IMG/VR virus record: IMGVR_UViG_3300048121_001678
Coordinates: 1 to 64,000 of that record
Length of the DNA stretch: 64,000 bases
Reading direction: 5' to 3' (one strand)
Positions 38,678 to 58,699 of the stretch are shown here, piece after piece. The notes under the pieces were generated by a model. It did not search any database. It was not told where the DNA came from and worked only from the letters and a program-made list of their open reading frames with translations. Each line of letters opens with the position of its first letter. Within the stretch, counting starts at the first letter, position 1. The position numbers and the translations under genes were made by a program.

Positions 38678-38818
38678 TTATGTCTCTTGTGAAAATAATA
38701 ACTCACCTGTTGTAGTCATCTCAATCATATAAGTCACCCCCGTACTTCCCGAGAATAAAACATGTGGGTTTGTATTTGCTGTAGTACCCGATGGGTAAAC
38801 AATTATAGTTTTAGCCAT
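38678..38818 (-). CDS. 46-aa stand-alone fibre-anchor-like peptide (not in ORF track)
   Basis: MAKTIIVYPSGTTANTNPHVLFSGSTGVTYMIEMTTTGELLFSQET resembles the N-termini of fibres 1 and 3; TAATG-coupled to fibre 3. Confidence 0.7.
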   Translation of the reverse strand: MAKTIIVYPSGTTANTNPHVLFSGSTGVTYMIEMTTTGELLFSQET

Positions 38819-41800
38819 TATATTTTATTTTTTAAATAAGTAATATCTTTATCAATATCATCAATCAATATCTGTTGTTCTTTAACCGCTTCAACTAAGT
38901 AAGCATTTAATAAAGAATAGTGTATACCTAAATAACCTTCTTTATTTCTAAAGACCACCTCAGGTATAATCTTATCAATCTCTTGTGCAATAATACCTAT
39001 TGAGTGTAATTTATCACGTTCTTTAAGGTACTCGTACATTGGTAAAGTCATGTTCCAATCATACTCCTTTAGTTCAATTTTTAATAACTTATCTAAAGAA
39101 CCAACAAGAGTATTAATTTCTTTTTTCAACCTTATATCTGATGGTGGAGGTGTCGGTCCATTAAAACAGTCTGGTTCTTGTGCAGCCACAAAACAAATAC
39201 TTAAATCAACAAGGTAAATTTCAATAGTACCAGGGTTGTTAATAAATACTATACCACCACGACAACCAGTGTTGTCACAGTTTTCACATCCTGAATCAGT
39301 CAAAAATGTACAATTCATGTTCCAACTCGAACAGTCGGGAGAATAGAAAGTTTGTAAGTTAGGTTCATCACAAATTGCGTCAGGGATATCACAATTGAAA
39401 TAGGTTTGAATTGCATTACAACCACCACCTGGTCCTGGAGGGCCAATGTCACCATTAGACCCTCTATATCCTTTAGGTCCTACACCACCTTGGTTACCTC
39501 TATTTCCTTTGTAAGTAATACCAATATTACCTTTTTGTCCCTTTTCCCCTATTGGTCCTTTTGGTGATGAACCTGTTGAACCTTGTGGTCCTTGATTTCC
39601 TCTAAAACCTTTATATCCTTGAGGACCTTTTATCCCTTTATTACCTTTTGGTCCTGGATTCGCATTACCTTTTGGTCCTTTGTCGTTAGATGTCGGGCCA
39701 GTTGAACCTATACCTCCTCTAGCTCCTTGTCCTCCCGGAGGACCATCAGGTCCATCAGCACCCGTGTCACCTCTGAAACCTTTATCACCAATATAACCTT
39801 TTGGCCCTTTAGCTCCCTTATCTCCGACACCGCCAGTGTTACCTCTGTTACCTGTTGCACCTTTATAACCTTTTGGTCCTTTATCTCCATCAGGTGCGGT
39901 TGGACCCTTGTTACCTTTTGGCCCTTTGTCGTTAGATGTTGGTCCTGTTGAACCACCATCACCAGTATCTATACCGCCTTTATATCCTTTAACACCTTTA
40001 ACACCTACCGGTCCTGTTGAACCACCTGGTCCTGGGTTAGGTGCACTTACGGGACCTAAAGAACCTTGTGGTCCTCTAACCCCTTGTGACCCTCTTGGTC
40101 CTTGTACCTTTGGTCCTTTATCTCCTGTAGGTCCTTGTGGTGACGCGCCTGGTGCACCTCTATTACCTTTAGGTGAAGCACCCTGTGGTCCTTTGGCACC
40201 TCTGAAACCTTTTTCACCAACAAAACCTTTTGGTCCTTTCGAACCTTGGTCACCAACACCACCTTGTGGTCCTCTGTTACCTGTAGCACCTTTATAACCT
40301 TTTGGTCCTTTAGGTCCATCAGGTGCGGTAAAACCTTTATAACCTTTCGGTCCTTTGTCGTTAGATGTCGGACCAGTTGAACCACCATCACCAATGTCGA
40401 CACCACCTTTATAACCTTTAACACCCTTAGTTCCCGTTGGCCCTGTTGAACCACCTGGTCCTGGATTGTTAGCACCTGTTGGCCCTGTTGAACCCGTACC
40501 AGCCCTATCACCCTGTGGACCAACTGGTGAATCACCTGTTGAACCTTGCGGACCAGTTGGTGACGTACCCGTAGAACCTCCCGGTCCTTGAGGTGAGTTA
40601 CCTTGTGGTCCTTTATTACCCGCAGTCCCTTTAAAACCTTTTAACCCTTTTGGTCCGTCAGCACCTTGGAATCCTTTTGGTCCTTTTGGTCCTGTAGGTG
40701 CAATATATCCTTTATTACCTTTTGGACCTGTAGGTGCAGTGTATCCTTTATCACCTGTTGGTCCTGTTTCCCCTGGGTCACCTTGTGGTCCAGGATTGGC
40801 ATATCCTTTTGGTCCTTTTGGTCCTGGATTACCGAAACCTTTTGGTCCTTTTGGTCCAGGATTATTACCACCTGTTGGTCCTGTTGAACCTCCACCACCT
40901 GTATTACCTCTTGGTCCTTGTGGTGAAGAACCAGTTGCTCCTCTATTACCTTTTGGTGATGAGCCTTGTGTTCCTTTGTTACCTTGTGGCGAGTTACCCT
41001 GTGGTCCTTTAGTACCTTTAGTACCTTTATTACCTTTATTACCTTTTGGTCCGTCAGCACCCGTAGCACCTCTATTACCTTTTGGCCCATCAGGTCCTGT
41101 AGTACCTTTTTGTCCTTTTTGTCCATCAGGTGCGATTGGACCCTTAATACCTTTTGGTCCTTTATCTCCTCCAGGTCCTTGTGGTCCTTGGTTACTATCA
41201 CCTGTTGAACCCCCTGGTCCTTGTGTTGACGCACCTGTTGGCCCTTGTGGACCTTGATTACTATCACCTGTCCCACCTTGGTTTCCTTGACTACCCTGTG
41301 AACCTTGTGGTCCTTGTGGTGACGCACCTGTTGAACCACCTGGTCCTTGCGGTGACGCTCCTGTTGAACCATTTCCACCTTTTTGAGAATTACCTTGAAC
41401 CCCTTTGGAGCCAGTTCCACCTTTAAATCCTTTAACCCCTTTAGCACCTTGGGAACCTTTGTTACCTTTATTACCTTTTGAACCAGCAGGTGCTGTTGGC
41501 CCTTTTAAACCTTTATCACCTAACCCACCCTTTTGTCCTTTTTGTCCCGTAGGACCTGTTGAACCACCGGGTCCTTGTGGGCCAGGATTGGCTTGACCTT
41601 TTTGACCTTTAGGTCCTGGATTGGCTTGACCTTTTTGACCTTTCGGTCCAGGATTATTTGAACCTGTTGGTCCTGTTGAACCACCAACACCCGTATTCCC
41701 TTGTGAACCTTGTGGTGAAGAACCTGTTGTACCTCTATTACCTTGAGGCGAGTTACCTTGTGGTCCTTTGGCACCTTGTGGTGAGTTACCTTGTGGTCCT

Positions 41801-43677
41801 TTATTACCTTTTGTACCCTTTTCACCAATAATACCTTTAGGTCCCGTATTACCTTTTTGACCTTTATTACCTTTTGACCCTACTGAACCTTTTACACCTT
41901 TATTACCTTTTGGTCCATCGTTACCTTTCTGACCTTTCTGACCTGGCTCACCAAAAGGTGCCGTCGGTCCTTTATCACCACCTGGACCAATTAAACCAAC
42001 GGGTCCTTGTGGACCTTGATTGGTATCACCTTTAATACCTTTTTGTCCAACATTAGAATCACCTAATTGTCCTTTTGGACCTGGATTTGCATCACCTTGA
42101 CCACCTTGTACTCCCTGTGTTGAATCGCCAACACCACCTTGAGTTCCTTGACCACCTTGTACTCCCTGAGGACCTTGTGGTGATGCCCCTGTTGAACCCT
42201 GAGGACCTTGTGGTGAATTACCTATAACCCCTTTATTACCTTGAGGGGAGTTACCCTGAGTCCCTTTAATTCCTTTTATACCTTTGGCACCTTTAAACCC
42301 TTTGGGTCCAACTGCACCTTTTACACCTTTTACACCAATTAAACCCTTGACACCTTTTTGTCCTTTTTCTCCAGCCTCACCATCAGGTGCAATAGGACCT
42401 TTAATACCTTTAGTACCTTTTTGTCCTTTCTCCCCCGTAGGTCCTTTAGGTCCAGGATTGTTATCACCAACAGGTCCTCGACCACCTTGAGTCTGCTCAC
42501 CTTTTTGGCCTTTGTCACCAGGTATATCTTCACTAGTAGGACCTGTAGAACCTTGGAAATTATCCCCAACAATCCCAACGTTACCCTGAGAACCTTTTAC
42601 ACCTTTACTACCTGTAATACCTTTTGGTGAACTACCTTGACTACCTTGACTACCTTTAGGGTTATTACCTTTCTGACCCTTTTCACCCAATTCGGTTTCA
42701 CCTTTCTGTCCTTTAAGACCTTTCTCACCTGTATCTCCGATATTTCCTGACTGAAACTGTTCAAAACTACCATTAACCATCACATCTGTAGATGTAATGG
42801 AATTAGTTAACGTAACACCATCTAAGAAGTTACCACCATTACTACTAGTTGTTGAACTAAATGTTAATACTAAACTACTATCTGTAGGTGTGAATGTGTG
42901 TGTATTTACTGTCCATTGGCTATTTGATGCAGTATAGTTACCTAAGTTAATATTTGTTGAACCACCAATAATAGTGACATTCATTATATTATCAAAAGAT
43001 GACCTACCTCTATGTGCAAAAGAAAGCACATACTCTTGACCCGAAACTACTGTAACTGTTTGTTGTAAGGCGTGTTTTTGTGATACTCTTGAATTGATTT
43101 CGGCAAAATAACTACCTGAATATGAAGGGACGTTTGAAAATCCACTAGCCCAAATTTCCACTACATTATCTGATGCAGTTGGGTCCCAACCTGGAATACA
43201 GTCTTCATAGAACCATGTAAACGTTGTTGGTGGTGGTGGACACGAACCTCCGAAACCATCTTCACCTTTATCACCTTTTTGACCTTTTACATTTTCACCT
43301 ACAGGACCTAAAATACCTTTTACACCCTTAGCACCTTTATAACCTTTATCACCTTTTACCTGATTGGTACCTTTTTCACCTTTAGGTCCTAAATCCCCTT
43401 TAATATTAGTGTCATTACCTATCCAATCACCAGCACTGTCTATTGTACTTGCTAATTTAAAATCAATGTCATCGACAAAATCAATATCACCCTTAACATT
43501 AAAGTTAAGTGTATCCGCGTCTATTTTTACTATCTCGTCACCCTGTGTTTTTCCTGAAAATACTAAAGAACCATCACTTTCTACGTTCATACGTATTTCA
43601 TCACCACTACTATTTGTGAAAAGAATATACGGGTTACCCCCTGAAGGGTTAGGTACAATTTTTATGTTCTTAGCCAT
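38818..43677 (-). CDS. Collagen-like tail fibre 3 with DUF642/CBM-like insert, Cys-rich tip and S74 chaperone
   Basis: Gly-X-Y stalk; beta-sandwich insert (IPGW...VEIW...FAEIN...LQQTV...LSFAHRGR...FLDGV); Cys-rich segment; PPSDIRLKKE S74 motif. Confidence 0.9.
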   Translation of the reverse strand: MAKNIKIVPNPSGGNPYILFTNSSGDEIRMNVESDGSLVFSGKTQGDEIVKIDADTLNFNVKGDIDFVDDIDFKLASTIDSAGDWIGNDTNIKGDLGPKGEKGTNQVKGDKGYKGAKGVKGILGPVGENVKGQKGDKGEDGFGGSCPPPPTTFTWFYEDCIPGWDPTASDNVVEIWASGFSNVPSYSGSYFAEINSRVSQKHALQQTVTVVSGQEYVLSFAHRGRSSFDNIMNVTIIGGSTNINLGNYTASNSQWTVNTHTFTPTDSSLVLTFSSTTSSNGGNFLDGVTLTNSITSTDVMVNGSFEQFQSGNIGDTGEKGLKGQKGETELGEKGQKGNNPKGSQGSQGSSPKGITGSKGVKGSQGNVGIVGDNFQGSTGPTSEDIPGDKGQKGEQTQGGRGPVGDNNPGPKGPTGEKGQKGTKGIKGPIAPDGEAGEKGQKGVKGLIGVKGVKGAVGPKGFKGAKGIKGIKGTQGNSPQGNKGVIGNSPQGPQGSTGASPQGPQGVQGGQGTQGGVGDSTQGVQGGQGDANPGPKGQLGDSNVGQKGIKGDTNQGPQGPVGLIGPGGDKGPTAPFGEPGQKGQKGNDGPKGNKGVKGSVGSKGNKGQKGNTGPKGIIGEKGTKGNKGPQGNSPQGAKGPQGNSPQGNRGTTGSSPQGSQGNTGVGGSTGPTGSNNPGPKGQKGQANPGPKGQKGQANPGPQGPGGSTGPTGQKGQKGGLGDKGLKGPTAPAGSKGNKGNKGSQGAKGVKGFKGGTGSKGVQGNSQKGGNGSTGASPQGPGGSTGASPQGPQGSQGSQGNQGGTGDSNQGPQGPTGASTQGPGGSTGDSNQGPQGPGGDKGPKGIKGPIAPDGQKGQKGTTGPDGPKGNRGATGADGPKGNKGNKGTKGTKGPQGNSPQGNKGTQGSSPKGNRGATGSSPQGPRGNTGGGGSTGPTGGNNPGPKGPKGFGNPGPKGPKGYANPGPQGDPGETGPTGDKGYTAPTGPKGNKGYIAPTGPKGPKGFQGADGPKGLKGFKGTAGNKGPQGNSPQGPGGSTGTSPTGPQGSTGDSPVGPQGDRAGTGSTGPTGANNPGPGGSTGPTGTKGVKGYKGGVDIGDGGSTGPTSNDKGPKGYKGFTAPDGPKGPKGYKGATGNRGPQGGVGDQGSKGPKGFVGEKGFRGAKGPQGASPKGNRGAPGASPQGPTGDKGPKVQGPRGSQGVRGPQGSLGPVSAPNPGPGGSTGPVGVKGVKGYKGGIDTGDGGSTGPTSNDKGPKGNKGPTAPDGDKGPKGYKGATGNRGNTGGVGDKGAKGPKGYIGDKGFRGDTGADGPDGPPGGQGARGGIGSTGPTSNDKGPKGNANPGPKGNKGIKGPQGYKGFRGNQGPQGSTGSSPKGPIGEKGQKGNIGITYKGNRGNQGGVGPKGYRGSNGDIGPPGPGGGCNAIQTYFNCDIPDAICDEPNLQTFYSPDCSSWNMNCTFLTDSGCENCDNTGCRGGIVFINNPGTIEIYLVDLSICFVAAQEPDCFNGPTPPPSDIRLKKEINTLVGSLDKLLKIELKEYDWNMTLPMYEYLKERDKLHSIGIIAQEIDKIIPEVVFRNKEGYLGIHYSLLNAYLVEAVKEQQILIDDIDKDITYLKNKI

Positions 43678-44523: not shown

Positions 44524-44552
44524 AAAGAAAGGGGACCGAAGTCCCCTTTTTT
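44523..44552. terminator. Bidirectional intrinsic terminator
   Basis: aaaggggac-cgaa-gtccccttttttt between convergent genes. Confidence 0.85.
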
Positions 44553-44830
44553 TATAAGAATTGTTTTACTTTTTCCAACGCTTCGTGGATGTCATCAAAA
44601 TCCCTGTCGGGCGCCATCAACTTCACATCGTTAACCTGTTCACCCTCATGTTCAATCAACATAAAAGCAGGAATAAATTCATTACCTGTTGCCTCTACAA
44701 ATATGTCATACTCTTTTTCATACTCATCAATATCTCTTTCAGTGTAATCCACATTAGATTCTTTAAGTAAATCCTTTATCTCATCGCAAAAAGGACAACC
44801 GTTCATTGAGTATAATATAACCGTTTTCAT
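44552..44830 (-). CDS. Glutaredoxin
   Basis: LYSMNGCPFC active site. Confidence 0.85.
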   Translation of the reverse strand: MKTVILYSMNGCPFCDEIKDLLKESNVDYTERDIDEYEKEYDIFVEATGNEFIPAFMLIEHEGEQVNDVKLMAPDRDFDDIHEALEKVKQFL

Positions 44831-45147
44831 TATAGAATAGAATTTTTTAATTCATTAAGTTGTGCTTCTTGTAACACACCCATTTTAGTTGATACTACCT
44901 TACCATCTGAAATCGCCTTAATTGTTGGGATAGAACGTACCCCCATCTCAACAGCTAAATCTTTATCAGACTCAATATCAAATTTATAAACATTAATTTC
45001 AGAACCCTCATCTTTTAGTTTCTGAGCGTATCTCTCAACGATAGGCCCCAATACACGACAAGGTCCACACCATTCAGCATACATGTCAACGATGAACTTC
45101 TCACCACTTTCCATTTTTTCTCTTAATTCTCTCGAAGTAATTACCAT
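44830..45147 (-). CDS. trxA: Thioredoxin
   Basis: DMYAEWCGPC and VRSIPT motifs. Confidence 0.93.
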   Translation of the reverse strand: MVITSRELREKMESGEKFIVDMYAEWCGPCRVLGPIVERYAQKLKDEGSEINVYKFDIESDKDLAVEMGVRSIPTIKAISDGKVVSTKMGVLQEAQLNELKNSIL

Positions 45148-45481: not shown

Positions 45482-46612
45482 TTAAACTTCTCTTTCTATA
45501 GGTTCAGTCATAATCATGTCTTTGACTTCATCGCTAACCTCTACCTCACTATACATATTATGTAAAGTTCTACCCAAATTTTCAGAAATTTCAATTGACT
45601 CAGCAATAATATAAGTAATACGATAAGGGTCAGCATTGGATGCCGGTCTCCTATCCTCAACATACCCATTCCACCCTTTAGATGTTTCTAAAGGAATACG
45701 AATCGATGCCCCTCTGTCAGAAACACCCCATGTGAATTTTTCAATTGATTGTGTCTCATGGTCACCAGTTAGTCTCATATTATTAGATGAACCATAACAT
45801 TTAATATGTTCAATATGACGTGACTCAAATGTCTTAAATAGTGTATTGAAATATTCCTTACCACCATTATCCCTCATCTCAACATTAGAGAAGTTACAAT
45901 GCAATCCAGAACCATTCCAATCACCCTGTACAGGTTTAGGGTGGAGTTCAATGTTAAATCCGTAATCCTCAGACATCTGCATCAATATATATCGAGACAC
46001 CCATAGGTCATCAGCCGACTTTAACTTACCTTTACCGAAAACTTGGTATTCCCATTGACCTAACATCACCTCAGCATTAGTACCAGTAATATCAATACCT
46101 GCCATGATACAATTTTCCATGTGTTGTTCCACAAATTCACGACCGTGAACCTGTCCATTACCAACCCCACAATAATACTTACCCTGAGGTTCAGGGTACC
46201 CATTCGTTGGGAAACCTAATGGTTTACCATCCTTCATAATTGTATACTCTTGCTCAAAACCAAACCATAAACCTTCTTCTTCCTCACCAATTAATTGGCG
46301 TGTGTTTGTATCGTGAGGCATACCATCAGCAGTCATTACCTCACACATAACCAAGTAAGAATCCAACATACCTTTATTAATTGGGTTTGGATATAACCTT
46401 ACTGGTTTCAAAATACAATCCGAAAAGTGTCCCTCAGCCTGCATCGTTGATGAACCATCAAAACCCCACTCGGGGCAATCTTCTAATCCTACACCGTGAA
46501 CTCTCTTTCCATTAACCTCATGTACGGGTGCACTTACTACCTTTACTTTACTACGTAGATTTGGTTCAGGGTTGTAACCGTCTAACCAAATATATTCTAA
46601 TTTAATTTTCAT
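45482..46612 (-). CDS. glnII: Glutamine synthetase type II
   Basis: LEYIWLDG, WGFDGSST, WFGFEQEY, YYCGVG, NAEVMLGQWEYQ, DWNGSGLHCNFS, RLTGDHET, RGASIRIP and EDRRPASNADPY. Confidence 0.95.
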   Translation of the reverse strand: MKIKLEYIWLDGYNPEPNLRSKVKVVSAPVHEVNGKRVHGVGLEDCPEWGFDGSSTMQAEGHFSDCILKPVRLYPNPINKGMLDSYLVMCEVMTADGMPHDTNTRQLIGEEEEGLWFGFEQEYTIMKDGKPLGFPTNGYPEPQGKYYCGVGNGQVHGREFVEQHMENCIMAGIDITGTNAEVMLGQWEYQVFGKGKLKSADDLWVSRYILMQMSEDYGFNIELHPKPVQGDWNGSGLHCNFSNVEMRDNGGKEYFNTLFKTFESRHIEHIKCYGSSNNMRLTGDHETQSIEKFTWGVSDRGASIRIPLETSKGWNGYVEDRRPASNADPYRITYIIAESIEISENLGRTLHNMYSEVEVSDEVKDMIMTEPIEREV

Positions 46613-46700
46613 GTATTATAATCTATTCTCTTTTAATTATAGGGGGTGTTTCTATATTTTAAATAAAAAAAGGGGTATTACCCCCTTATTTTTTTAACAA

Positions 46701-47282
46701 TTACCCTTGATAATCCTCAATAGGTTCACCATCGGTATCAATCAAGTCATGACATTCACGTAACATCTCTTGTTGACGTTCGTATAACGACTCCATGAAT
46801 TCCATTTGAACATTATCATAATCCTCATCTTCCCAGTCCTTATCAACTGTCGGGTCTTCCATCTCATCATCTTCTTCAACCCAAATACATGGTGTTCCAT
46901 CCACGTCTTTTTTGATTACAATCGCACCAATCGGGTCATACCCCTCATCTTCATATTGTACTTCAATAAATACATTAGGGTCCATCTCCACCAACATATT
47001 GTAAAGGTGAATGAAGAATTGTGTAGGTGGATACCATGCAGATGTTAGTGTGAAACTACCATCACCTGTGATATCCTCCATGTATGTCCATTTAGGACCC
47101 ATCTTATCTGATGCCCATGAATACATAACACCACCACTTTCACCTAATTCTACATCATCGTAGAATGTTTGCGCAAATGTGGTAATCTCACCATCATTTG
47201 CTTTGTCTAATAACCCATCAAGATGTTTGATGGTCTCTTCGTTTGCATGGACTTCAACCATGCTTTTCATATAATTTGCCAT
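46701..47282 (-). CDS. DUF1281/YubB-like ferredoxin-fold protein
   Basis: MGPKW...FTLTSAWYPPT...QYEDEG pattern. Confidence 0.55.
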   Translation of the reverse strand: MANYMKSMVEVHANEETIKHLDGLLDKANDGEITTFAQTFYDDVELGESGGVMYSWASDKMGPKWTYMEDITGDGSFTLTSAWYPPTQFFIHLYNMLVEMDPNVFIEVQYEDEGYDPIGAIVIKKDVDGTPCIWVEEDDEMEDPTVDKDWEDEDYDNVQMEFMESLYERQQEMLRECHDLIDTDGEPIEDYQG

Positions 47283-47286
47283 GTCT

Positions 47287-47484
47287 TTATTCTTCTATTA
47301 ATTCAGGCCACTCGGTGTCCTCTAATACTTTATCGTTAGTTAATTCGAATTCAAGTTCATCCATGAGTTCTTCTTGAATATCCTCATCATCCGATTCCCA
47401 AAGTTTTACTTGGTCCTCTGTTAATTCTTCTGTGTCTTCCCAACGAACTGTTGTGATAATCACTTTTCTTCTTAGTTTTGCCAT
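47287..47484 (-). CDS. Small acidic hypothetical protein
   Basis: 65-aa ORF. Confidence 0.65.
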   Translation of the reverse strand: MAKLRRKVIITTVRWEDTEELTEDQVKLWESDDEDIQEELMDELEFELTNDKVLEDTEWPELIEE

Positions 47485-47494
47485 ATCTTATTTA

Positions 47495-47869
47495 TTAATA
47501 TTCGTATTCTCCGTATGCTAATGGTTGGAAACCACCTGTCTTTGTCCACTCCTCATTTGGTACACCCACTTGAAGTGATTCATCACATCCCTTAGTACGA
47601 GAATCGAAGAACTCATTCTCAACATAAGCCTCTTCCATACATAATTCATATACTGCATCCTCACCATAAACTTCTTTATTAGTTTCGTTCTCATAGAATT
47701 CGTACTCATTCCACACTTCGTTTTGTAGATAGTTTACCAATTCTTGTTCTGATTCACCTTCGTATGGTGGTTCGCATTTACGAAGTGCTTCTACATTTAC
47801 CTCAATAGGTTCACTTGCAGATGAGATTGTCCAAGTCTCAATTTTACGGACATAAATTTTTTCACTCAT
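47495..47869 (-). CDS. Acidic hypothetical protein
   Basis: 124-aa ORF. Confidence 0.7.
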   Translation of the reverse strand: MSEKIYVRKIETWTISSASEPIEVNVEALRKCEPPYEGESEQELVNYLQNEVWNEYEFYENETNKEVYGEDAVYELCMEEAYVENEFFDSRTKGCDESLQVGVPNEEWTKTGGFQPLAYGEYEY

Positions 47870-47881
47870 TGTTTTTATCCA

Positions 47882-48061
47882 TTAATTGTTTAAAATTCCT
47901 TTACCTAAAATCAACGGTGAACCATCTTTATGATTGAATACACGAAAATGATTCTCACGCTCAATTACTATCGGTGTTACTTTTTCAAATGTTTTTTTGT
48001 AATGCTTCATTACATAGTCAACAACTTTCTGTTCGGTTTCTTTTTGCAATTCTTTTTCCAT
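47882..48061 (-). CDS. Hypothetical 59-aa protein (not in ORF track)
   Basis: Translated by hand, MEKELQKETEQKVVDYVMKHYKK...DGSPLILGKGILNN. Confidence 0.6.
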   Translation of the reverse strand: MEKELQKETEQKVVDYVMKHYKKTFEKVTPIVIERENHFRVFNHKDGSPLILGKGILNN

Positions 48062-48149
48062 TTCTTTTTTGTTTAATGTTTACAACAAAATTAAGCAAAA
48101 AAAAGGAGGGAGTCAAACTCCCTCCATAAAATTATCAAAGTTTTTTTTC

Positions 48150-50708
48150 TTAGAAATTATATCTCAAACTTGCGTTCCATGTACGACCGAAACCGAACCA
48201 TACAGAGTTAGCAGTATTAATACCTTTCCAAGTATCGTCACCATCTTCAGCGTGAATACTTGTATTAGACTCAGCGATGTATACTGTGTTCAATAAGTTG
48301 TTTACATTCAAACGTAATGTCCAATCACCCAATCTTGAAGTAACACCTAAATCAACCAATCCGTAAGAAGGTAACTTAACAGCACCTCTATTGTCAGGTG
48401 TGTAGAATTCTTCATCAACTATTGAATAGTCAGCATATAAACCATCTACTAAACGTAAACCTAAATCTACACTTGTTGATTTGACCAATTTATAATCTGC
48501 AGTGAAGTATGCTGTAGTCTGAGCCGCGTCACCCACCTTAGCACCTTTCAAGTACAACGTACCTTGACCTACTTCTTGTTGATTATCATCAAACAATGTA
48601 GCTGAGAAATCTTTTGTATATCTCCAATCACCGAATGAACCCATTGCTTTCAATCTCAACTTATCAGTTGCGTTGTAATCTGCTTCAATCTCAATACCGT
48701 TGTGACGTACATCAATGTCTCTAAACTGTGCCGTACCATCAACACCGTTAGCATTACTTAACGATACAGTTTGGAATCTATTACCCCATGTTGTTGAGTA
48801 AGCATTTACGTTAATACGTAAATCTCTTGTGTTATAACCATAGCCTGCTTCGAAAGAAATAATCTCTTCGTTTTCTAAGTCTTCGTTGATGTTATTCGCA
48901 TATGATGGGAACACAGCACCAAACTGAGCCTGACGAGATATGTACCCAGCATTCATGAAGAAGTTAGATACGTCAGTAGCATTGTAGTTAGCACCACCTT
49001 TTAGGTAACCACCTAACAAGTTAGCCGTCTCAGAGATAGCGTTACCCGGTTGGTCAAAGTAGTCCTCACGTTGGAACGATTGATTAGAAAGACCACCTTG
49101 AAGTACTACGTTGTACGTGTTGTCAGAGTTATACTCCACAAGACCGTTAAGACCTTGCCACCCAACATTACCTACGTTGTAGTAATCAATCTTAGGTCCA
49201 TTCAATCCAGTCGATGTAAATGGTGTTGCAGCAATTGTGGTTTCAATAATCTGACCACCTGAATTTCTATTACCCGTTGAATAATATCCGTCAAGACCCA
49301 TCAAGTTGTTTACTGTACGGTAGTGGAAACCTTTATAGGTTCTCAAGTCAACACCAATAGATGTTCTGAAGTTACCGAACTGTCCTTCTAAATTAGAGAT
49401 ACCACCAACCCAGTTGTGTGAGTTCATAGACGCTCTACGAATTAATACCTCACGGTTTACATTACTATCACGGAATCCATTAGAACCAATCAACGCCCCA
49501 TCAAATCCTGAGATATCACCTGTATACCCGTCAGTAGTTGATTGGTTGTTAGCAACAACCGCATCATAATCAATAGTACCATCCTCATTACGTGAACCTC
49601 TACCATTTTCCATATAGTGTTCGTATAAGTCCTTACGGAAAGGAAGAATATCAGCCTCAGCGGAACGATAGTTGTTACCACGAGGACCAGTACCACCACC
49701 ACGTCCAGCAGAACCGTACAATGATGTAACCAATTTCAAGTTAGAATTGATTTTCCAATCCCAGTTGAAAGTAGCCAATGGTTTGTTGTAGAAGTTTCTT
49801 CTCATTGAGAATTCTTCACCACCCAACGTACCACCGTTTGTGTTCCAACGACGGTTGATTTCACCACCGTCACCTTTGAATCCATTGTCATCAGTAAAGT
49901 ATTGGTAGTCACGAATACTTACCCACACATCACGTTGGTGGTGCCATTGTCCAGCACCTAAGAACGTAAAGTTCAAACTATGGTCAGAACCCTCAGGGGC
50001 ATAACCGATAGCAGCAAAATAGTTATAACCCTCACCTGATGTGTTGTTAATATAACCATTACCCATCCATCTACTTAAAAGGAATGACGTTGCCCATCCT
50101 TTATCGTTTTTACCTGAGTTGTAAACTGCAGATGTCTTGAAGTAACCATCGTTACCTACCATCTGCGATAAAGAACCACCTTCTTTTTTGTCAGCAGCCT
50201 TTGTAAAAATAGATACCGTACCACCTACAGATGGGACAGCCAATTTAGACGCACCCAAACCTCTTTGGATTTGAATACCTGAAGCCACATCAGTCAAACC
50301 TTGCCAGTTCGACCAATATAGTCTACCATTTTCCATATCATTAACAGGTTGACCGTTGATAAGGAAAGATGTGTTAGTTTGGTCGAAACCACGTAATGAT
50401 ATACGTGAATCACCATAACCACCACCTTGCTTAGTAGCGTAAACACCAGGAGTGGTGTTCATAATCTCAGGGAACTCTAAGTTACCTGTCTTCAAAGAAA
50501 TCTCTGATGGAGAAATCGTTGATACTGCAATTGGTGTCTCGCGAACCTTTGCAATGTCAATCACCCCTGACGTAACAACAACTTCATCCAAAGTTTCGAA
50601 GTTGAATAGGGAATCTACAGACTCAAGTTTTTCGGCTTCTTGAGCAAAAGCACTATTCACTGTTAATAATGCTCCAGTGATGAAAGCCAATAAATTCAAT
50701 TTTTTCAT
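48150..50708 (-). CDS. TonB-dependent outer-membrane receptor (Bacteroidota type)
   Basis: Signal peptide, TonB-box-like LDEVVVTS, plug TPGVY...ISLRGF...INGQPVND and C-terminal NVNNLLN...GRTWNASLRYNF. Confidence 0.93.
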   Translation of the reverse strand: MKKLNLLAFITGALLTVNSAFAQEAEKLESVDSLFNFETLDEVVVTSGVIDIAKVRETPIAVSTISPSEISLKTGNLEFPEIMNTTPGVYATKQGGGYGDSRISLRGFDQTNTSFLINGQPVNDMENGRLYWSNWQGLTDVASGIQIQRGLGASKLAVPSVGGTVSIFTKAADKKEGGSLSQMVGNDGYFKTSAVYNSGKNDKGWATSFLLSRWMGNGYINNTSGEGYNYFAAIGYAPEGSDHSLNFTFLGAGQWHHQRDVWVSIRDYQYFTDDNGFKGDGGEINRRWNTNGGTLGGEEFSMRRNFYNKPLATFNWDWKINSNLKLVTSLYGSAGRGGGTGPRGNNYRSAEADILPFRKDLYEHYMENGRGSRNEDGTIDYDAVVANNQSTTDGYTGDISGFDGALIGSNGFRDSNVNREVLIRRASMNSHNWVGGISNLEGQFGNFRTSIGVDLRTYKGFHYRTVNNLMGLDGYYSTGNRNSGGQIIETTIAATPFTSTGLNGPKIDYYNVGNVGWQGLNGLVEYNSDNTYNVVLQGGLSNQSFQREDYFDQPGNAISETANLLGGYLKGGANYNATDVSNFFMNAGYISRQAQFGAVFPSYANNINEDLENEEIISFEAGYGYNTRDLRINVNAYSTTWGNRFQTVSLSNANGVDGTAQFRDIDVRHNGIEIEADYNATDKLRLKAMGSFGDWRYTKDFSATLFDDNQQEVGQGTLYLKGAKVGDAAQTTAYFTADYKLVKSTSVDLGLRLVDGLYADYSIVDEEFYTPDNRGAVKLPSYGLVDLGVTSRLGDWTLRLNVNNLLNTVYIAESNTSIHAEDGDDTWKGINTANSVWFGFGRTWNASLRYNF

Positions 50709-50735
50709 TTTAAATTATTTTGAATTATTTATTAT

Positions 50736-50763
50736 AAAAAAAACCGAAGTGTGTACTCCGGTT
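50736..50763 (-). terminator. Intrinsic terminator immediately upstream of the TonB receptor ATG
   Basis: Minus-strand AACCGGAG-UACACA-CUUCGGUU stem plus U-tract, under 30 nt before the start codon. Confidence 0.65.
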
Positions 50764-50827
50764 CTTATTATACAAGTTAATTACCTCATACATTGATGAG
50801 GTTCCATTGGTTAGGGTATTAATCGTT

Positions 50828-50944
50828 TTACCTTCCTTGACCACGATATTTGTTTTTGTTAATAGACATGTCATTCTTAGAATTAATTCCATGACGAGAG
50901 TTTTGTGTGTTATGTATTGTTTCAACGGAATTAAATTTTACCAT
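50828..50944 (-). CDS. 38-aa basic micro-protein ending YRGQGR
   Basis: TATATTTG promoter at 50970-50977 precedes this ATG; the KYRGQGR C-terminus is typical of small phage proteins. Confidence 0.6.
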   Translation of the reverse strand: MVKFNSVETIHNTQNSRHGINSKNDMSINKNKYRGQGR

Positions 50945-51005
50945 TTTTATTTGTCTTATCTTAACACTACAAATATATACAAATAAGTTAGACAAATACA
51001 ACCCT

Positions 51006-52667
51006 TTAGAAAAAAAAGTCAAAAATATCATCTTTTACGTCCTCAGTGTTATCCCAGACCAATCTTTTTTTGTTCCAATAAGATTGTCTTTGTATTATTT
51101 TACCATTTGGAAACTCTTTTTTCATCTTAGGTAGTTCAATTACCCTCAACTCACTTAACCTCTTTATACGGTTATTCATCTCTTCTAAAACGTAGTTCCA
51201 ATTAGAACTTAAGGTATTATTGAAACGACCTAATGATTGTACATTTAATGGTTCACTCCCTTTGAAATATTTATACTCTACTGTCGCTCTTTCTTTACCA
51301 TGTACACTACCTTCACGAATTGACACAATAAAACAATTAGATTGTTCAATATACGTTCTTACACAGTTTTTTTGATGACTACTTTCTTCGTTGTACTGTT
51401 CAGTAGTTGTTAACAACACGGGATAGTAATCTAAATGTGGTCCAATGATTGGTAACTGAATCTCATTAACCATCATTTTAGAGTATTTTCTTTTAATCTT
51501 ACCTTTCCTATAACTCTCTAATAAAATAACCCACTCATTGTGTTCATTATCAAATTGTGACTTTGTTCTCGCTCTAAACTTTACATTCACATCATACTTT
51601 AACAAATCTCTTTTGAACCTAAGATGGTCATTAATTATTGAAACCAATGCATCTTCTACTTTTATGATATCACTACTTTCAGTTTTACTACCATAGTCAT
51701 TGATGAAGTCGACTAAACACCTTTTCTCTATATTTGATAGCTCAACTTCATGTATATGTGGGTTTTGTCTTGAAACATCATTTTCTTTATCATGTATTAA
51801 CTCAAGACTCAACATATTAAAAAAATCGACACCGAGTAACTCATAAAAGAAACTAAGTCCATAAAAGTTCACATTATTAGATGAATTCAACATCTTACGA
51901 ATTTTTTTACCTTTATATCCCTTATCTTTCATAAACGCGTCAACCACTGAGTCTGCCTTCTTTAATAATGACTTTTTAATCGATATCGGTAAGAACTTAC
52001 CAGGATTATTAGGTAACTTAAAGTTATTAGATATATAATAATATCTAAAATATTCATCAACCACTGTACTCACATCCCCAACCACTTTACCAATTCCTAA
52101 AGTATCATTAAAAACATCAATAGCATCCCAAAATATTTTCCAGCCGTGTTTGGTATCCATAATCATTGCGTTGTTCCCTGATAACGACACTTCGTTGACA
52201 TTATTAACTATAGAGGATAATATACCCTGAATATGACTCCAGTTATTTGTCCTAACATGTTTACCACGAATCTTTTTCTTTGATGTATTCACAGCACCAC
52301 TATAAAAGTTTCTATACTTCTTGCTGTAAGTGATATACTGTACCTGTTTAGTAGTACCAAAATACGTTGTACCCACCTTTCTACCTTTTGAAAAATTATA
52401 AATCTTGAGTGATATCGACTTTTCATTTTCCTCAACAACAACTGTAACTCTATCAATATAAATCCCTTTGGTTTTATCAGGATAATATTGTTTAAGTTCC
52501 TCTTCATTCTTAAGGACTATCTTTTGTTTCTTTCTCCAATAACTACCTTTTTTGTTTAAATTAAATGAGTAATAATCGTCTACCTCCCCATAGTCAAATT
52601 CACAGGTATCATAATAAGTCCACATCCATATGGTCTCATCTTGATATTTGTATAAAGGTGTTTTCAT
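51006..52667 (-). CDS. PcfJ-domain protein
   Basis: LTTTEQYNEESSHQKNCVRTY...IVSIR...RATVEY...QSLGRFN. Confidence 0.75.
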   Translation of the reverse strand: MKTPLYKYQDETIWMWTYYDTCEFDYGEVDDYYSFNLNKKGSYWRKKQKIVLKNEEELKQYYPDKTKGIYIDRVTVVVEENEKSISLKIYNFSKGRKVGTTYFGTTKQVQYITYSKKYRNFYSGAVNTSKKKIRGKHVRTNNWSHIQGILSSIVNNVNEVSLSGNNAMIMDTKHGWKIFWDAIDVFNDTLGIGKVVGDVSTVVDEYFRYYYISNNFKLPNNPGKFLPISIKKSLLKKADSVVDAFMKDKGYKGKKIRKMLNSSNNVNFYGLSFFYELLGVDFFNMLSLELIHDKENDVSRQNPHIHEVELSNIEKRCLVDFINDYGSKTESSDIIKVEDALVSIINDHLRFKRDLLKYDVNVKFRARTKSQFDNEHNEWVILLESYRKGKIKRKYSKMMVNEIQLPIIGPHLDYYPVLLTTTEQYNEESSHQKNCVRTYIEQSNCFIVSIREGSVHGKERATVEYKYFKGSEPLNVQSLGRFNNTLSSNWNYVLEEMNNRIKRLSELRVIELPKMKKEFPNGKIIQRQSYWNKKRLVWDNTEDVKDDIFDFFF

Positions 52668-52730: not shown

Positions 52731-54611
52731 TTATATTACACCACCATAGTAGTTTTTATTAGTTACCCATAGTTGGTAACCCCTTCGTAATAATTCTCGA
52801 CTAAAAGATATGTCAAAATCATCATCAGTATAAATACCATTACCTTTTTGATACACACCAATTAAGTCTGTAATTACATCACTTTTGAACATTATAATAC
52901 CTGTTATATACCCAACACTAAAAGTATCTTTAACGTCATAATTTCTAATTTTATTTTGTTGTTCTGATTCAACATTATAACCGTCTTTATCTGTCCTAAA
53001 CCAAAAATTAACCCAGTCAGTACCCTCACTGACAATCATTGGTGATATTATATTCTTACCCTCAGATATTAAATACTTTATCGAATCCCTATTTCTAAAG
53101 ACGTAGTTACAGTCTAAATTAATAACGTAGTCCACATCATATTTTAAACTTTCGAATAAAGACATATTCCTTTTTTCCGCATTGTTTAGTTTAACATAAT
53201 GTTTTTTAACACTCCTATAAAGGTCTTTGAATTTTTCAATAAACCTATCAACTTTATAGTGATGCTTATCATCATCAAAGAATATTTGTATTTCTATTTT
53301 TTCTTTTGGGTGGTTAAGGTATCTAATTTGGTCAAATACTTGGTCAATATCCGAAACATTAAAATCTAAAAATAAATTTAACAATAATGTATAATCACCA
53401 CCATCAACTTTATCCTTTACAAATATTTCATTATAAATTTCACCTAACTTATCTTTAGTAATTGAAGGTCCGTTACCATGTATTATTGACGGGAATGTTT
53501 TAGTCACTTCATTGTATACACGTCCGTCTTTTATAACAACGTCATCGGTTGCTAAGTTTAATGTTTGAAATATATTTTGGTCATGGTCTAATATCATTTC
53601 ACTATTAGTATCACCATTACCATTTCTCTTAACTAACCACCCATTATTATTATACTTAGACCAATTCTTCAACTTATAGGACGGTAAGACATCTTCAATT
53701 GTGTCACCTTTAAAATCTCCCTCATTAAAATCGACAATCAGTATCACCTCTTTAAAAGTATTAGTTAACGCCTCATATAAACTAATATTTTCATATTTTA
53801 TATCATATATAAATAACACATCAGGTTTACGAACCAAATTATCAACACTATCAACAACCTCATCGTAAATATACTTAATATTATATTCACTATTTAATGC
53901 AGTGATATACTTAAAATGCGAACCAAACAAAATACCATATCTACCGTTTAATGGATTTAAATCGCATAAAACATCTTTTACATCATATTTTTCTCTTAAA
54001 TGTTTTAATATGTCATTTTCAAATTCACCGTAATCAACATTATCAATAGTTGTTTTATCGTGATTAAGATAGTAATCAGTGTAGTAACCTTGGTCATCAT
54101 CAGACTTATTTATGTCAACATCAATCATTTTTTTTATGTGATTACCATAACCCATAAATCCACCTGAATTTAAAAACTTATACTCACCATCAACAATAGG
54201 ATATCTATCAGATAACTCCTGATTTGGCCAACAGGTCTTTTCCGCACTGAAAACCAATGGACGGTTAAACTCCCTGAACTTACGTATTATATTGTTTGGT
54301 GTATCGTTGAATATTACATCATACGAATCAGAAAATAAGATTATAGTATTCTCTAAATCATCCCATTTATTAATCTCATCCCTTAAATAGATTATCTTTT
54401 GAGCCCCACCTGGTTCTAACAACACACCATTCTCTGCACGACCACTCTCCCACTTATCACCTAAACCTAAAATAATATAAGGTATGTTGTTTTTAGTACA
54501 ACTATCCTCGAACCTATCTAAGTTTTCATTTCTGTCTGTTGCGACAGTAATAACGATGAAACGGTCAATACCGTCAGAGTATATGTTTTTAATTTTGTTG
54601 TAGATTCCCAT
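52731..54611 (-). CDS. PLOD (procollagen lysyl hydroxylase/glycosyltransferase)-like GT + accessory domains, without hydroxylase domain
   Basis: TVATD, LGLGDKW, GGAQKI, FSDSYDV, VFSAEKTCWP, FLNSGGFMG, DDDQ..YT, LDHDQNIFQ, IHGNGP, IISPMI and NFW follow the PLOD order; the protein ends before any 2OG domain. Confidence 0.85.
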   Translation of the reverse strand: MGIYNKIKNIYSDGIDRFIVITVATDRNENLDRFEDSCTKNNIPYIILGLGDKWESGRAENGVLLEPGGAQKIIYLRDEINKWDDLENTIILFSDSYDVIFNDTPNNIIRKFREFNRPLVFSAEKTCWPNQELSDRYPIVDGEYKFLNSGGFMGYGNHIKKMIDVDINKSDDDQGYYTDYYLNHDKTTIDNVDYGEFENDILKHLREKYDVKDVLCDLNPLNGRYGILFGSHFKYITALNSEYNIKYIYDEVVDSVDNLVRKPDVLFIYDIKYENISLYEALTNTFKEVILIVDFNEGDFKGDTIEDVLPSYKLKNWSKYNNNGWLVKRNGNGDTNSEMILDHDQNIFQTLNLATDDVVIKDGRVYNEVTKTFPSIIHGNGPSITKDKLGEIYNEIFVKDKVDGGDYTLLLNLFLDFNVSDIDQVFDQIRYLNHPKEKIEIQIFFDDDKHHYKVDRFIEKFKDLYRSVKKHYVKLNNAEKRNMSLFESLKYDVDYVINLDCNYVFRNRDSIKYLISEGKNIISPMIVSEGTDWVNFWFRTDKDGYNVESEQQNKIRNYDVKDTFSVGYITGIIMFKSDVITDLIGVYQKGNGIYTDDDFDISFSRELLRRGYQLWVTNKNYYGGVI

Positions 54612-56379: not shown

Positions 56380-57255
56380 TTAACCCACCAAAGAGTCATC
56401 AATAATATCAGTTAAAGTATAATTCATAATTAATAGTTCAGTCCCTTTTGATTGTGCCTTACCACTACTAGCACCCGCAGCCTTTGCAAAATCTTTAGTT
56501 TCCCACACATATTCGTCTTTTGGAAACCATTCACTTAATAAGTCAAAGTCATAGTAAGATAACGAGTACCTACTCTTAACCTCAGACAATACTTTGGCTA
56601 GTCTTTCATGGTCTTCTCTATCAAAATCATGATTTGAATAATAATTTTCAGTCTTCCAATAAGGTGGGTCTAAGTAAATATATGTCGTTGGTGAGTCATA
56701 CTTTTTAATTACGTCTTCAAAGTCCATATTCTCTACGTGTGTTACCGCCAAAAACTTATTAACCCACTTCTCATTTTTCAACTTATCACGGAAAGTTAGA
56801 AACTTAGATTTATACTTACCCTTTAGGTCGATAAATTTAGAGGTCTCAGGTTTACTACCACTGAATACTGAAGTAAGAATGTATGCATATTTAGCGGCAA
56901 CATCATAGTCAGGACCATTTACCTCAAATCCATCAGCAAAGATTTCACTCTGAAACTGTTCAAACTGTGTACGATAGATATCGGGTGTTGGAAACTCTCC
57001 TCTCTGTTGACAAGAAATAGACTCAACAGCCTTCAATAAATCCTTTGGTTTCTGTATACATTGAAATAAATTATAATTTAATGGATTGAAATCATTATAC
57101 ACAACCCTTTTAAGGTTTGGGAACTTCTCCATATCCATATTATAGAAACACCAAAACATACCACCGAATGTCTCAACATATGTTTCCATATCTTGTGGGT
57201 AATAATCTATAATCCATTTACCAATTCTACTTTTTCCTCCTATATAACTTAACAT
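56380..57255 (-). CDS. D12-class (Dam-like) N6-adenine DNA methyltransferase
   Basis: LSYIGGKS, YVETFGG, VYNDFN, YLDPPY and ELLIMNY. Confidence 0.9.
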   Translation of the reverse strand: MLSYIGGKSRIGKWIIDYYPQDMETYVETFGGMFWCFYNMDMEKFPNLKRVVYNDFNPLNYNLFQCIQKPKDLLKAVESISCQQRGEFPTPDIYRTQFEQFQSEIFADGFEVNGPDYDVAAKYAYILTSVFSGSKPETSKFIDLKGKYKSKFLTFRDKLKNEKWVNKFLAVTHVENMDFEDVIKKYDSPTTYIYLDPPYWKTENYYSNHDFDREDHERLAKVLSEVKSRYSLSYYDFDLLSEWFPKDEYVWETKDFAKAAGASSGKAQSKGTELLIMNYTLTDIIDDSLVG

Positions 57256-58549: not shown

Positions 58550-58699
58550 ATGAAACAAAAAGAAAAAACAGGGTGTAAACAATGTAAAAACAAACTAAAT
58601 GGTACACAAACCGTAATGGTGGTATTATCTATTTATATATTTTTATCATCCATTTATGGTACAGTAAAACTATTTGGTTTAGTTAAAGATTTATTCTGA
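58550..58699 (+). CDS. 49-aa CxxC membrane micro-protein (not in ORF track)
   Basis: MKQKEKTGCKQCKNKLNGTQTVMVVLSIYIFLSSIYGTVKLFGLVKDLF. Confidence 0.6.
   Translation: MKQKEKTGCKQCKNKLNGTQTVMVVLSIYIFLSSIYGTVKLFGLVKDLF

What the first reader, a model, noticed from the sequence alone, without database searches (positions are those of the whole stretch)
48150..50708. Intact phage-encoded TonB-dependent receptor
Seen: a full-length 852-aa receptor with signal peptide, plug and barrel beta-signal, flanked by phage-type genes and its own terminator (about 48097-48126). It is GC-richer than its neighbours, with frequent CGT/AAC/TTC codons. Established: such receptors import scarce nutrients and serve as phage receptors. 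Inference: an auxiliary uptake gene or a superinfection-exclusion/receptor-decoy function, probably host-derived.
Basis: partly seen in the sequence, partly recalled or inferred. Interest (0 to 1): 0.6.

Follow-up and report, generated by a model that had tools for sequence, protein, structure and literature searches.

The report
Host-like TonB receptor in jumbo phage
A 297-kb marine jumbo phage really does carry an intact, strongly conserved copy of its Flavobacteriales host's outer-membrane TonB-dependent transporter, most likely to keep nutrient import running during infection; phage-encoded transporters of this kind have been reported before, so this is a well-documented new example and not a new kind of system.

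Summary
Window 48150-50708 (-) is an uninterrupted 852-aa TonB-dependent transporter. It has a signal peptide, TonB box, plug, modelled 22-strand barrel and terminal Phe, and sits between two strong terminators.

The window is the first 64 kb of a 297,164-bp IMG/VR phage genome (CheckV 99%) with terminase, portal, major capsid protein, RNR, tmRNA and tRNAs. The gene is not a chimera. The same flanks recur in six other assemblies, and contigs from two other seawater runs cross both junctions without a mismatch.

The nearest bacterial orthologues (82-85% aa) are chromosomal genes of Schleiferiaceae/Cryomorphaceae. At least 129 IMG/VR contigs carry relatives; those checked are mostly large phages.

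- Phage copies are under strong purifying selection (dN/dS 0.01-0.11).
- They keep 98-100% of the columns invariant in bacteria.
- Surface loops are no more divergent than in host-host comparisons.
- G000's codon bias ranks second to the capsid gene.
- The gene is mosaic: a phage-lineage N-terminus joined to a host-like barrel. An AU test rejects one origin at this locus (p 2.6e-5).

Best reading: a working, highly expressed uptake gene that relies on host TonB and BAM. Substrate and expression are untested. Exclusion or decoy roles are not supported but not excluded.

The parts
48150..50708 (-). Complete CDS of the 852-aa TonB-dependent transporter (P0001), stop codon included
50643..50708 (-). 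Signal peptide, residues 1-22 (MKK, hydrophobic core, AFA|QE)
   Evidence: read from the translation; no signal-peptide predictor was available
50568..50588 (-). TonB-box-like motif DEVVVTS, residues 41-47
   Evidence: consensus kept in 79 viral and 79 bacterial rows
50220..50546 (-). Plug domain (Pfam residues 55-163); 93-97% identical to host and phage relatives
48153..50183 (-). 22-strand beta-barrel, residues 176-852, ending in Phe
   Evidence: strand parsing used
50409..50531 (-). Approximate mosaic boundary (residues ~60-100). Upstream of it the gene is closest to syntenic phages L006/L009; downstream it is closest to Schleiferiaceae hosts
48097..48125 (-). Intrinsic terminator of the gene (9-bp stem, T8)
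50738..50770 (-). Terminator-like hairpin plus T-run ending the upstream unit. Stem kept through compensatory changes in five related phages
50709..50737 (-). Conserved AT-rich leader (TATAATAAATAA...) between that hairpin and the ATG; possible promoter
   Evidence: conservation; motif not clearly enriched; the promoter role is inference
51006..52667 (-). Upstream conserved phage gene (553 aa, PcfJ-like), the left synteny anchor
47495..47869 (-). Downstream phage ORFan (124 aa). Right-hand synteny anchor in L163; a 124-aa ORF lies upstream of the gene in L178

Best explanation
The gene is a functional TonB-dependent outer-membrane transporter carried as an accessory (auxiliary metabolic) gene by a 297-kb tailed jumbo phage of marine Flavobacteriales, probably Schleiferiaceae/Cryomorphaceae. 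Shown: it is intact, phage-borne at a conserved locus, under strong purifying selection in phage lineages, and a mosaic of phage-lineage and host-like alleles. Inferred mechanism: it is transcribed during infection as its own unit between two terminators and translated efficiently. It is exported by host Sec and folded into the outer membrane by host BAM through its C-terminal Phe signal. It is energised by the host TonB-ExbBD complex through its TonB box, because the phage has none of these genes. It then adds to or replaces the host's own orthologue, so import of that transporter's unknown substrate continues through the long, costly replication of a genome about one sixth the size of the 1.7-1.9 Mb host genome. 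The need to fit host TonB, BAM and substrate would explain why phage alleles stay close to host alleles and are repeatedly exchanged by recombination, much as cyanophage psbA is.
For: The contig is a phage: 297,164 bp, CheckV 99% complete; TerL, portal, major head protein and RNR; tmRNA and 5 tRNAs. The gene is not a chimera. The same gene order occurs in L163, L176, L177, L178, L006 and L009 from other assemblies. In run X2 a 27.5-kb contig and a 1,363-bp contig cross the two junctions with 0 differences, and in X3 a 4,185-bp and a 646-bp contig do the same. Exact pieces of the gene occur in a viral-fraction metagenome. Bacterial loci share only this gene with the phage. Selection: phage-phage dN/dS is 0.06 (dS 0.19), 0.075 (dS 0.55), 0.035 and 0.013, the same range as host-host pairs at 0.025-0.08. 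Viral copies keep 97.8-100% (G000 100%) of 279 columns near-invariant in 79 bacterial orthologues; the TonB-box consensus and terminal Phe are kept. The plug is the most conserved region, and the loop share of substitutions is 0.34-0.46 for phage-host against 0.37-0.43 for host-host pairs of similar divergence. Codon bias ranks 2nd of 84 long genes, behind the capsid gene, although dS to hosts is saturated. No TonB_C, ExbB or ExbD was found in the phage. The fold is a canonical 22-strand transporter. Neighbouring accessory genes (GS-like, thioredoxin, glutaredoxin) and an RNR about 85 kb away fit a programme of sustained biosynthesis.
Against: No direct evidence of expression. RNA-library contigs inside the gene were only about 93% identical and could come from hosts or other phages. 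The substrate is unknown. There was no PDB sequence hit at E 1e-3 and only generic fold matches at 12-15% identity. No riboswitch was found. No transport partner lies nearby in the phage or in bacteria, where the gene sits beside recA or phosphoglucose isomerase. The plug is poorly modelled. Conservation of transport residues is also compatible with a protein that must simply look like the host receptor. The host is inferred from this gene's phylogeny alone.
Confidence: 0.6

Rival explanations
1. Superinfection exclusion or receptor-landscape remodelling. The phage copy replaces, masks or outcompetes the host transporter that this or rival phages use for adsorption, or acts as a decoy on debris or vesicles. 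Transport would be incidental.
For: TonB-dependent transporters are classic phage receptors (FhuA with T5 pb5 and the Llp exclusion protein are among the fold matches). The gene lies about 4.5 kb from three collagen/Peptidase_S74 fibre genes. A 2026 preprint proposes this role for huge-phage outer-membrane proteins.
Against: Surface loops of the phage copy are no more divergent from host copies than host copies are from each other, so there is no sign of a receptor-blind variant. The plug, TonB box and every bacterial-invariant residue are kept under dN/dS of about 0.06, which a pure decoy would not need. A faithful copy of a receptor would increase adsorption, not reduce it.
Confidence: 0.2
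2. Receptor supply. The transporter is the phage's own receptor, and phage-driven overexpression, perhaps spread by vesicles, raises the susceptibility of neighbouring or marginal hosts.
For: The copy is host-like in its loops, has a high-expression codon bias and lies close to the fibre genes.
Against: Entirely indirect. Extra receptor on lysed-cell debris would trap progeny. No receptor assignment exists for this phage.
Confidence: 0.07
3. Neutral passenger: host DNA picked up recently, with no role for the phage.
For: Close to host orthologues (82-85% aa) and GC above the genome mean.
Against: dS to the nearest hosts is about 1.8, so the pickup is not recent. Purifying selection holds between phage lineages. 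The gene is kept at the same locus in at least seven assemblies that differ by up to 25% aa. It occurs in related jumbo phages G004 and G013. Codon bias has been maintained.
Confidence: 0.03
4. Assembly chimera or host contamination inside a viral contig.
For: Metagenomic origin; the contig is linear without terminal repeats. Logan contigs break inside the gene, where conserved host and phage alleles collide.
Against: Both junctions were recovered with 0 mismatches in two other runs. Synteny is identical in six other assemblies. The gene lies 48 kb from the contig end, with phage genes on both sides.
Confidence: 0.01

Closest known systems
Chromosomal TonB-dependent receptor of marine Schleiferiaceae/Cryomorphaceae (e.g. 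loci L084, L087) and its orthologues in Polaribacter, Roseivirga, Ekhidna and Gracilimonas
   Same: 82-85% aa identity over the full length, with the same plug, barrel, TonB box and terminal Phe. It was the only strong match (E<=1e-20) in three of the four host genomes checked.
   Different: The bacterial copies sit among housekeeping genes: recA upstream in Schleiferiaceae, phosphoglucose isomerase upstream in Flavobacteriaceae. They have a different N-terminal 75 residues (48-72% identity). Many carry an extra N-terminal CarboxypepD_reg domain that G000 lacks.
TonB-dependent receptors reported in huge phages: Mar_Mega_1 and LR745206 ('SusC', PMC9723777); Lak phage cluster HP2985 and the survey of 1,603 huge-phage beta-barrel proteins (bioRxiv 10.64898/2026.10.24.761521)
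   Same: A 22-strand TonB-dependent transporter encoded by a phage over 200 kb that is predicted to infect Bacteroidota and is interpreted as an uptake or envelope-remodelling gene.
   Different: A different transporter lineage: megaphages LR745206 and LR75650x match only the first ~250 residues at 28-31%. The preprint describes most huge-phage outer-membrane proteins as relatively distant from their recovered host homologs. This one is 82-85% identical to host genes, is spread over at least 129 IMG/VR contigs, and is shown here to be mosaic and under purifying selection.
Cyanophage psbA and other core host genes carried by phages (own knowledge)
   Same: A phage copy of a host protein kept close to the host allele, under purifying selection, with intragenic host-phage mosaicism and repeated exchange.
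   Different: An outer-membrane importer, not a photosystem subunit. Turnover and expression during infection have not been measured, and the analogy is an inference.
FhuA, FecA, Fiu, PqqU (solved TonB-dependent transporters)
   Same: The same plug-in-barrel fold: Foldseek E 1e-35 to 1e-30, TM 0.6-0.77.
   Different: Only 12-15% identity and no sequence-level PDB hit, so no substrate can be transferred.
Phage exclusion proteins acting at outer-membrane receptors (T5 Llp on FhuA; lambda Lom on LamB, as cited in the preprint)
   Same: Phage-encoded envelope proteins that change the receptor landscape.
   Different: Those are small lipoproteins or 8-strand barrels that bind a receptor. This is a full copy of a transporter itself.

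Membership tests
TonB-dependent transporter (TBDT) | N-terminal plug domain (PF07715) | tested here: met
   46.5 bits against cutoff 23.9, residues 55-163
TonB-dependent transporter (TBDT) | C-terminal 22-strand beta-barrel (PF00593) | tested here: met
   56.1 bits against cutoff 27; 22 strands in the AF2 model; Foldseek matches to FhuA and FecA at E<=1e-30
TonB-dependent transporter (TBDT) | TonB box ahead of the plug | tested here: met
   DEVVVTS at residues 41-47; consensus kept in viral and bacterial rows. Binding to TonB was not tested.
TonB-dependent transporter (TBDT) | Sec signal peptide and C-terminal aromatic beta-signal for BAM | tested here: met
   Read from the sequence; terminal Phe in 76 of 79 viral and 71 of 79 bacterial rows. 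No predictor was run.
TonB-dependent transporter (TBDT) | Energisation by TonB-ExbB-ExbD and actual substrate transport | not testable with these tools
   No TonB_C, MotA_ExbB or ExbD in the phage genome, so the host complex would be needed.
SusC-like transporter (the name used for megaphage receptors) | Adjacent SusD-like lipoprotein and the SusC/RagA signature | tested here: not met
   No SusD-type Pfam hit among phage neighbours or among the bacterial neighbours scanned. No SusC/RagA NCBIfam model hit.
Cobalamin receptor BtuB (JGI label on some relatives) | Cobalamin riboswitch upstream and BtuB-specific family match | tested here: not met
   No Rfam hit upstream at E<=1 apart from noise; no BtuB NCBIfam hit.
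Phage auxiliary metabolic gene | Host-type cellular gene inside a bona fide phage genome, with viral genes on both sides, conserved among related phages | tested here: met
Phage auxiliary metabolic gene | Expressed during infection with a benefit to the phage | tested here: inconclusive
   RNA-library contigs inside the gene were only about 93% identical. Indirect support comes from dN/dS and codon bias.

The most novel reading that the evidence does not exclude
This transporter family may be a psbA-like shared gene pool between marine Bacteroidota and their large phages. On this reading, phages ranging from about 62 kb to about 300 kb (mostly estimated at 136-300 kb) routinely carry it, swap whole barrels with host alleles by recombination inside the conserved plug, and may ferry alleles between bacterial families and even orders. 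That would explain 65-70% identity between Flavobacteriales, Cytophagales and Balneolaceae copies alongside a patchy distribution (15 of 151 Flavobacteriales genomes at E<=1e-150). Phages would then shape the evolution of a major nutrient gate of marine Flavobacteriales, and the gate's substrate would be a resource limiting jumbo-phage production in the sea.
Probability: 0.3. Interest if true: 0.7.

Novelty: new member of a known kind. Interest (0 to 1): 0.5.

Why it matters
Many known phage auxiliary genes act inside the cell. A faithful and probably highly expressed phage copy of a host outer-membrane importer suggests that large marine phages also manage what an infected cell takes up. The gene occurs on at least 129 viral contigs, in seawater metagenomes from 18 studies, and shows host-phage allele mosaicism. 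It is therefore a tractable marker for linking uncultured jumbo phages to Flavobacteriales hosts and a lead to a nutrient that may limit phage production. It also gives a concrete case for testing uptake against receptor remodelling for the many outer-membrane proteins recently catalogued in huge phages.

Tried and rejected
- **Substrate:** I found no clue. phmmer against PDB gave nothing at 1e-3. NCBIfam gave only weak N-terminal hits far below cutoffs. Foldseek gave generic matches. The Atlas gave only 'putative TonB-dependent receptor' clusters, some mostly viral.
- **Regulation:** Rfam found no riboswitch or leader upstream.
- **Operon partner in bacteria:** there is none. The conserved neighbours are recA or phosphoglucose isomerase.
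- **Phage-encoded TonB, ExbB, ExbD:** not found.
- **Known phages:** megablast of the locus against 50,697 phage records gave no match. tblastn gave only 26-34% hits in gut and megaphage contigs.
- **Promoter motif:** the conserved TATAATAAATAA leader is not clearly enriched upstream of other genes, so I assign no temporal class.
- **Expression:** the one RNA run laid holds phage-flank contigs at about 98% identity but only about 93% pieces inside the gene, so I make no claim.
- **Extra loop divergence, as expected for a receptor-blind or decoy variant:** not seen.
- **Terminase family search on 18 related records:** positive only in the complete 252.6-kb record. The others are fragments, so this says little.
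- **** was a mistyped reference and returned an error.
- **Not used:** the large representative protein search, complex prediction, and any alternative genetic code.
Full report
**1. The observation**

The ORF at 48150-50708 on the minus strand starts with ATG and encodes 852 residues without a stop. Pfam finds a Plug domain (residues 55-163) and the TonB-dependent receptor barrel (331-805), both above their curated cutoffs.

The translation shows these features directly:
- a Sec-type signal peptide (MKK, a hydrophobic core, AFA|QE, no lipobox cysteine);
- a TonB-box-like DEVVVTS at residues 41-47;
- a C-terminal ...RYNF.

An AlphaFold2 model built on 32 relatives has pLDDT 74 and pTM 0.75. 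The barrel blocks score 80-90 and the plug is poorly modelled. The model parses into 22 strands, 11 outward loops and 10 short turns. It matches FhuA, PqqU, Fiu and FecA at E 1e-35 to 1e-30, but at only 12-15% identity.

A second hairpin with a T-run lies 30 nt upstream of the start codon at 50738-50770 (dG -13.9). Its stem is kept through compensatory changes in five related phages. The gene is therefore its own unit between two terminators.

Composition claims also hold:
- GC is 40.2% against a gene mean of 34.1%.
- CGT is 54% of Arg codons against 18% in other genes, AAC 64% against 32%, and TTC 74% against 29%.

**2. The contig is a phage and the gene belongs to it**

The window is bases 1-64000 of a single 297,164-bp IMG/VR record rated 99% complete. 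The record holds:
- a large terminase, portal, major head protein and both RNR subunits;
- a tmRNA and five tRNAs;
- about 327 mostly small ORFs covering 94% of the sequence.

Around the gene lie three collagen-repeat proteins with Peptidase_S74 chaperone ends (probable long fibres), glutaredoxin, thioredoxin, a short glutamine-synthetase-like gene, ORFans, a PcfJ-like protein, a PLOD-type glycosyltransferase, an LRR protein, a Dam methylase and DnaJ.

The same gene order, with the transporter in the same slot, occurs in six other assemblies from other samples:
- L163 (98% aa);
- L176, L177 and L178 (87-88%);
- L006 and L009 (75%).

Contigs from two further seawater runs cross both junctions with no differences. 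In X2 these are 49792-52000 on a 27.5-kb contig and 47834-49196. In X3 they are 46700-48270 and 50281-50926. A viral-fraction metagenome holds exact pieces of the gene.

Eighty bacterial loci share nothing with the phage in this neighbourhood apart from the transporter and a weakly similar (38-41% aa) thioredoxin.

**3. Relatives**

The word-indexed protein search returned thousands of close homologues.

In species-representative genomes, the nearest copies (82-85% aa) are in Schleiferiaceae and Cryomorphaceae MAGs and one single-cell genome. Copies at 64-72% occur in Polaribacter and other Flavobacteriaceae, Roseivirga, Ekhidna, Jiulongibacter and Gracilimonas.

In bacteria the gene is chromosomal. 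It was the only strong match (E<=1e-20) in three of the four host genomes checked. Its position is stable within families: recA lies upstream in 13 Schleiferiaceae/Cryomorphaceae loci, and phosphoglucose isomerase lies upstream in 25 Flavobacteriaceae loci. There is no SusD or other transport partner.

The gene is not universal. Only 15 of 151 evenly drawn Flavobacteriales genomes matched at E<=1e-150.

On the viral side, 129 IMG/VR contigs encode a relative at 65% identity or more. Their flanks rarely match the bacterial flanks and often share other genes with this phage. From contig length and CheckV's completeness estimate, most of the 18 records checked come from genomes of about 136-300 kb. 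The set includes:
- a complete 252.6-kb phage, G004, and a 113-kb fragment, G013; both share G000's capsid protein (45-47%), and G004 also its portal (40%);
- two complete phages of about 63 kb, one of them with terminal repeats.

**4. Evolution**

In a 159-row tree the virus/bacterium label needs 13 changes, and at least 9 are forced by well-supported branches. Exchange has therefore been repeated.

G000's protein is a mosaic:
- Residues 1 to about 75 (signal peptide, linker, TonB box) are 82-97% identical to the syntenic phages L006 and L009 but only 48-72% identical to host copies.
- From about residue 80 onward it is 80-100% identical to Schleiferiaceae copies and only 56-82% identical to L006 and L009.
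- The same pattern holds at nucleotide level.

In a tree of residues 100-852, G000, L163, L176, L177 and L178 fall in a 100%-supported clade with seven Schleiferiaceae-type bacteria and the viral contigs L003 and L004. L006 and L009, from the same phage locus, fall in a separate all-viral clade. An AU test rejects a single origin for the copies at this locus (delta lnL 133, p 2.6e-5). I defined that group by synteny, but I had already seen the first tree.

The barrel has therefore been replaced at least once at a fixed phage locus, with a crossover in the highly conserved plug.

The events are old. Synonymous divergence to the nearest hosts is about 1.8 and nucleotide identity is 70-90% throughout. 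Within the mixed clade the phage copies branch beside the bacterial ones and are not nested inside them. The direction of that particular transfer is unresolved. The family as a whole looks bacterial in origin because it is embedded among housekeeping genes.

**5. Is it functional in phages?**

- Phage-phage comparisons give dN/dS of 0.06 (G000-L163, dS 0.19), 0.075 (L006-L009, dS 0.55), 0.035 and 0.013. These values are as low as those for host-host pairs, 0.025-0.08.
- Viral copies keep 97.8-100% (median 99.6%, G000 100%) of 279 columns that are near-invariant in 79 bacterial orthologues.
- The plug differs from host copies at only 6-7% of positions.
- The share of differences falling in outward loops is 0.34-0.46 for phage-host pairs against 0.37-0.43 for host-host pairs of equal divergence. 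There is no sign of a remodelled surface.
- On an index of CGT and C-ending Asn, Phe, Tyr and Ile codons, the gene ranks 2nd of 84 long genes, immediately behind the major capsid gene. Host copies show the same bias relative to their neighbours.

Synonymous sites are saturated between phage and host, so this bias has been maintained in the phage. That points to high expression. It also means the raised GC is largely a codon-selection signal and not a mark of recent import.

The phage has no TonB, ExbB or ExbD.

**6. Mechanism**

Shown: an intact, selected, phage-resident transporter gene with its own terminators.

Inferred:
- It is made in quantity during infection.
- It is exported and assembled by host Sec and BAM.
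- It is powered by host TonB.
- It sustains import of the substrate that the host's orthologue carries.
- This supports replication of a genome roughly one sixth the size of the 1.7-1.9 Mb host genomes, alongside the phage's RNR, thioredoxin, glutaredoxin and GS-like genes.

Dependence on host partners would explain why alleles stay host-like and are swapped. I put this reading at about 0.6.

The exclusion or decoy reading (about 0.2) is not excluded, but it gains nothing from the loop analysis and does not explain the conserved plug and TonB box. A receptor-supply idea (about 0.07), a neutral passenger (0.03) and a chimera (0.01) are the remaining rivals.

**7. What is known**

Phage-borne TonB-dependent receptors have been noted in the marine megaphage Mar_Mega_1 and in LR745206 (PMC9723777). 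[quoted passage not shown] It discusses both uptake and exclusion roles, and it also notes glutamine synthetases in aquatic huge phages.

Atlas clusters of this very family are already labelled 'putative TonB-dependent receptor' and are largely viral. The kind is therefore known.

I did not find the following described in the searchable literature:
- the closeness to a specific host orthologue;
- the breadth across marine viral contigs;
- the quantified selection and capsid-level codon bias;
- the intragenic mosaic with a rejected single origin.

I file the finding as a new member of a known kind.

**8. Limits**

- Expression is unproven.
- The substrate is unknown.
- The host is inferred only from this gene.
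- The viral status of many short IMG/VR contigs rests on IMG/VR and CheckV.
- The order-level survey scored at most six candidates per genome.
- The plug model is weak.
- No signal-peptide predictor was available.

Noticed in passing
window 14237-14644 (-): Full-length GOLLD RNA (RF02032), 295 bits, E 1.8e-83, in this marine jumbo phage.
   Followed up: no
window 30629-34687, 34687-38634, 38818-43677 (-): Three giant GC-rich (43-45%) genes of 1352, 1315 and 1619 aa with collagen triple-helix repeats and C-terminal Peptidase_S74 chaperone domains. They are probably long collagen-like tail fibres.
   Followed up: partly
window 52731-54611 (-): A PLOD-type (collagen lysyl-hydroxylase family) glycosyltransferase of 626 aa with two GT_PLOD stretches. 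It may modify the collagen-like fibres nearby, as in giant viruses.
   Followed up: no
window 45482-46612 (-): A short (376 aa) glutamine-synthetase-like gene next to thioredoxin (44830-45147) and glutaredoxin (44552-44830). It is conserved in the syntenic phages at 71-88%. The 2026 preprint reports GS in aquatic huge phages.
   Followed up: partly
G000 234463-234852 (L172:10463-10852) and 267776-268453: A phage-encoded tmRNA (Rfam 82.5 bits; ARAGORN tag ending ...EEVAVA) and a cluster of five tRNAs (Arg, Met, Thr, Ser, Tyr).
   Followed up: partly
window 50828-50944 (-), promoter-like stretch about 50960-50995: A small 38-aa ORF (67 aa from an upstream ATG) between the PcfJ-like gene and the transporter. 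It is preceded by TTTG...TAtaTTTG, which resembles a Bacteroidota promoter, and is followed by the conserved hairpin. Its function is unknown.
   Followed up: partly
window 56380-57255 and 58691-59629 (-): A Dam-type N6-adenine methyltransferase and a full DnaJ (J domain, zinc finger, C-terminal domain) encoded by the phage.
   Followed up: no
L025, L034 (IMG/VR contigs): Viral contigs whose RNR large subunit is 85% identical to G000's. They carry a transporter allele that groups (100% support) with a Balneolaceae MAG copy, which hints at gene flow across phyla.
   Followed up: no
G000 156429-158231, 160940-164122, 169388-170500, 213433-214152, 246406-246942, 288781-289251: The motif TATTTATAATAAA lies 9-28 nt upstream of six gene starts and may be a phage promoter or leader. 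It was not tested against chance in this AT-rich genome.
   Followed up: no
L151 (Paceibacterota MAG), L155 (Euzebya MAG): Close copies of this Bacteroidota-type transporter sit in MAGs labelled as Patescibacteria and Actinomycetota. These are most likely binning errors.
   Followed up: no
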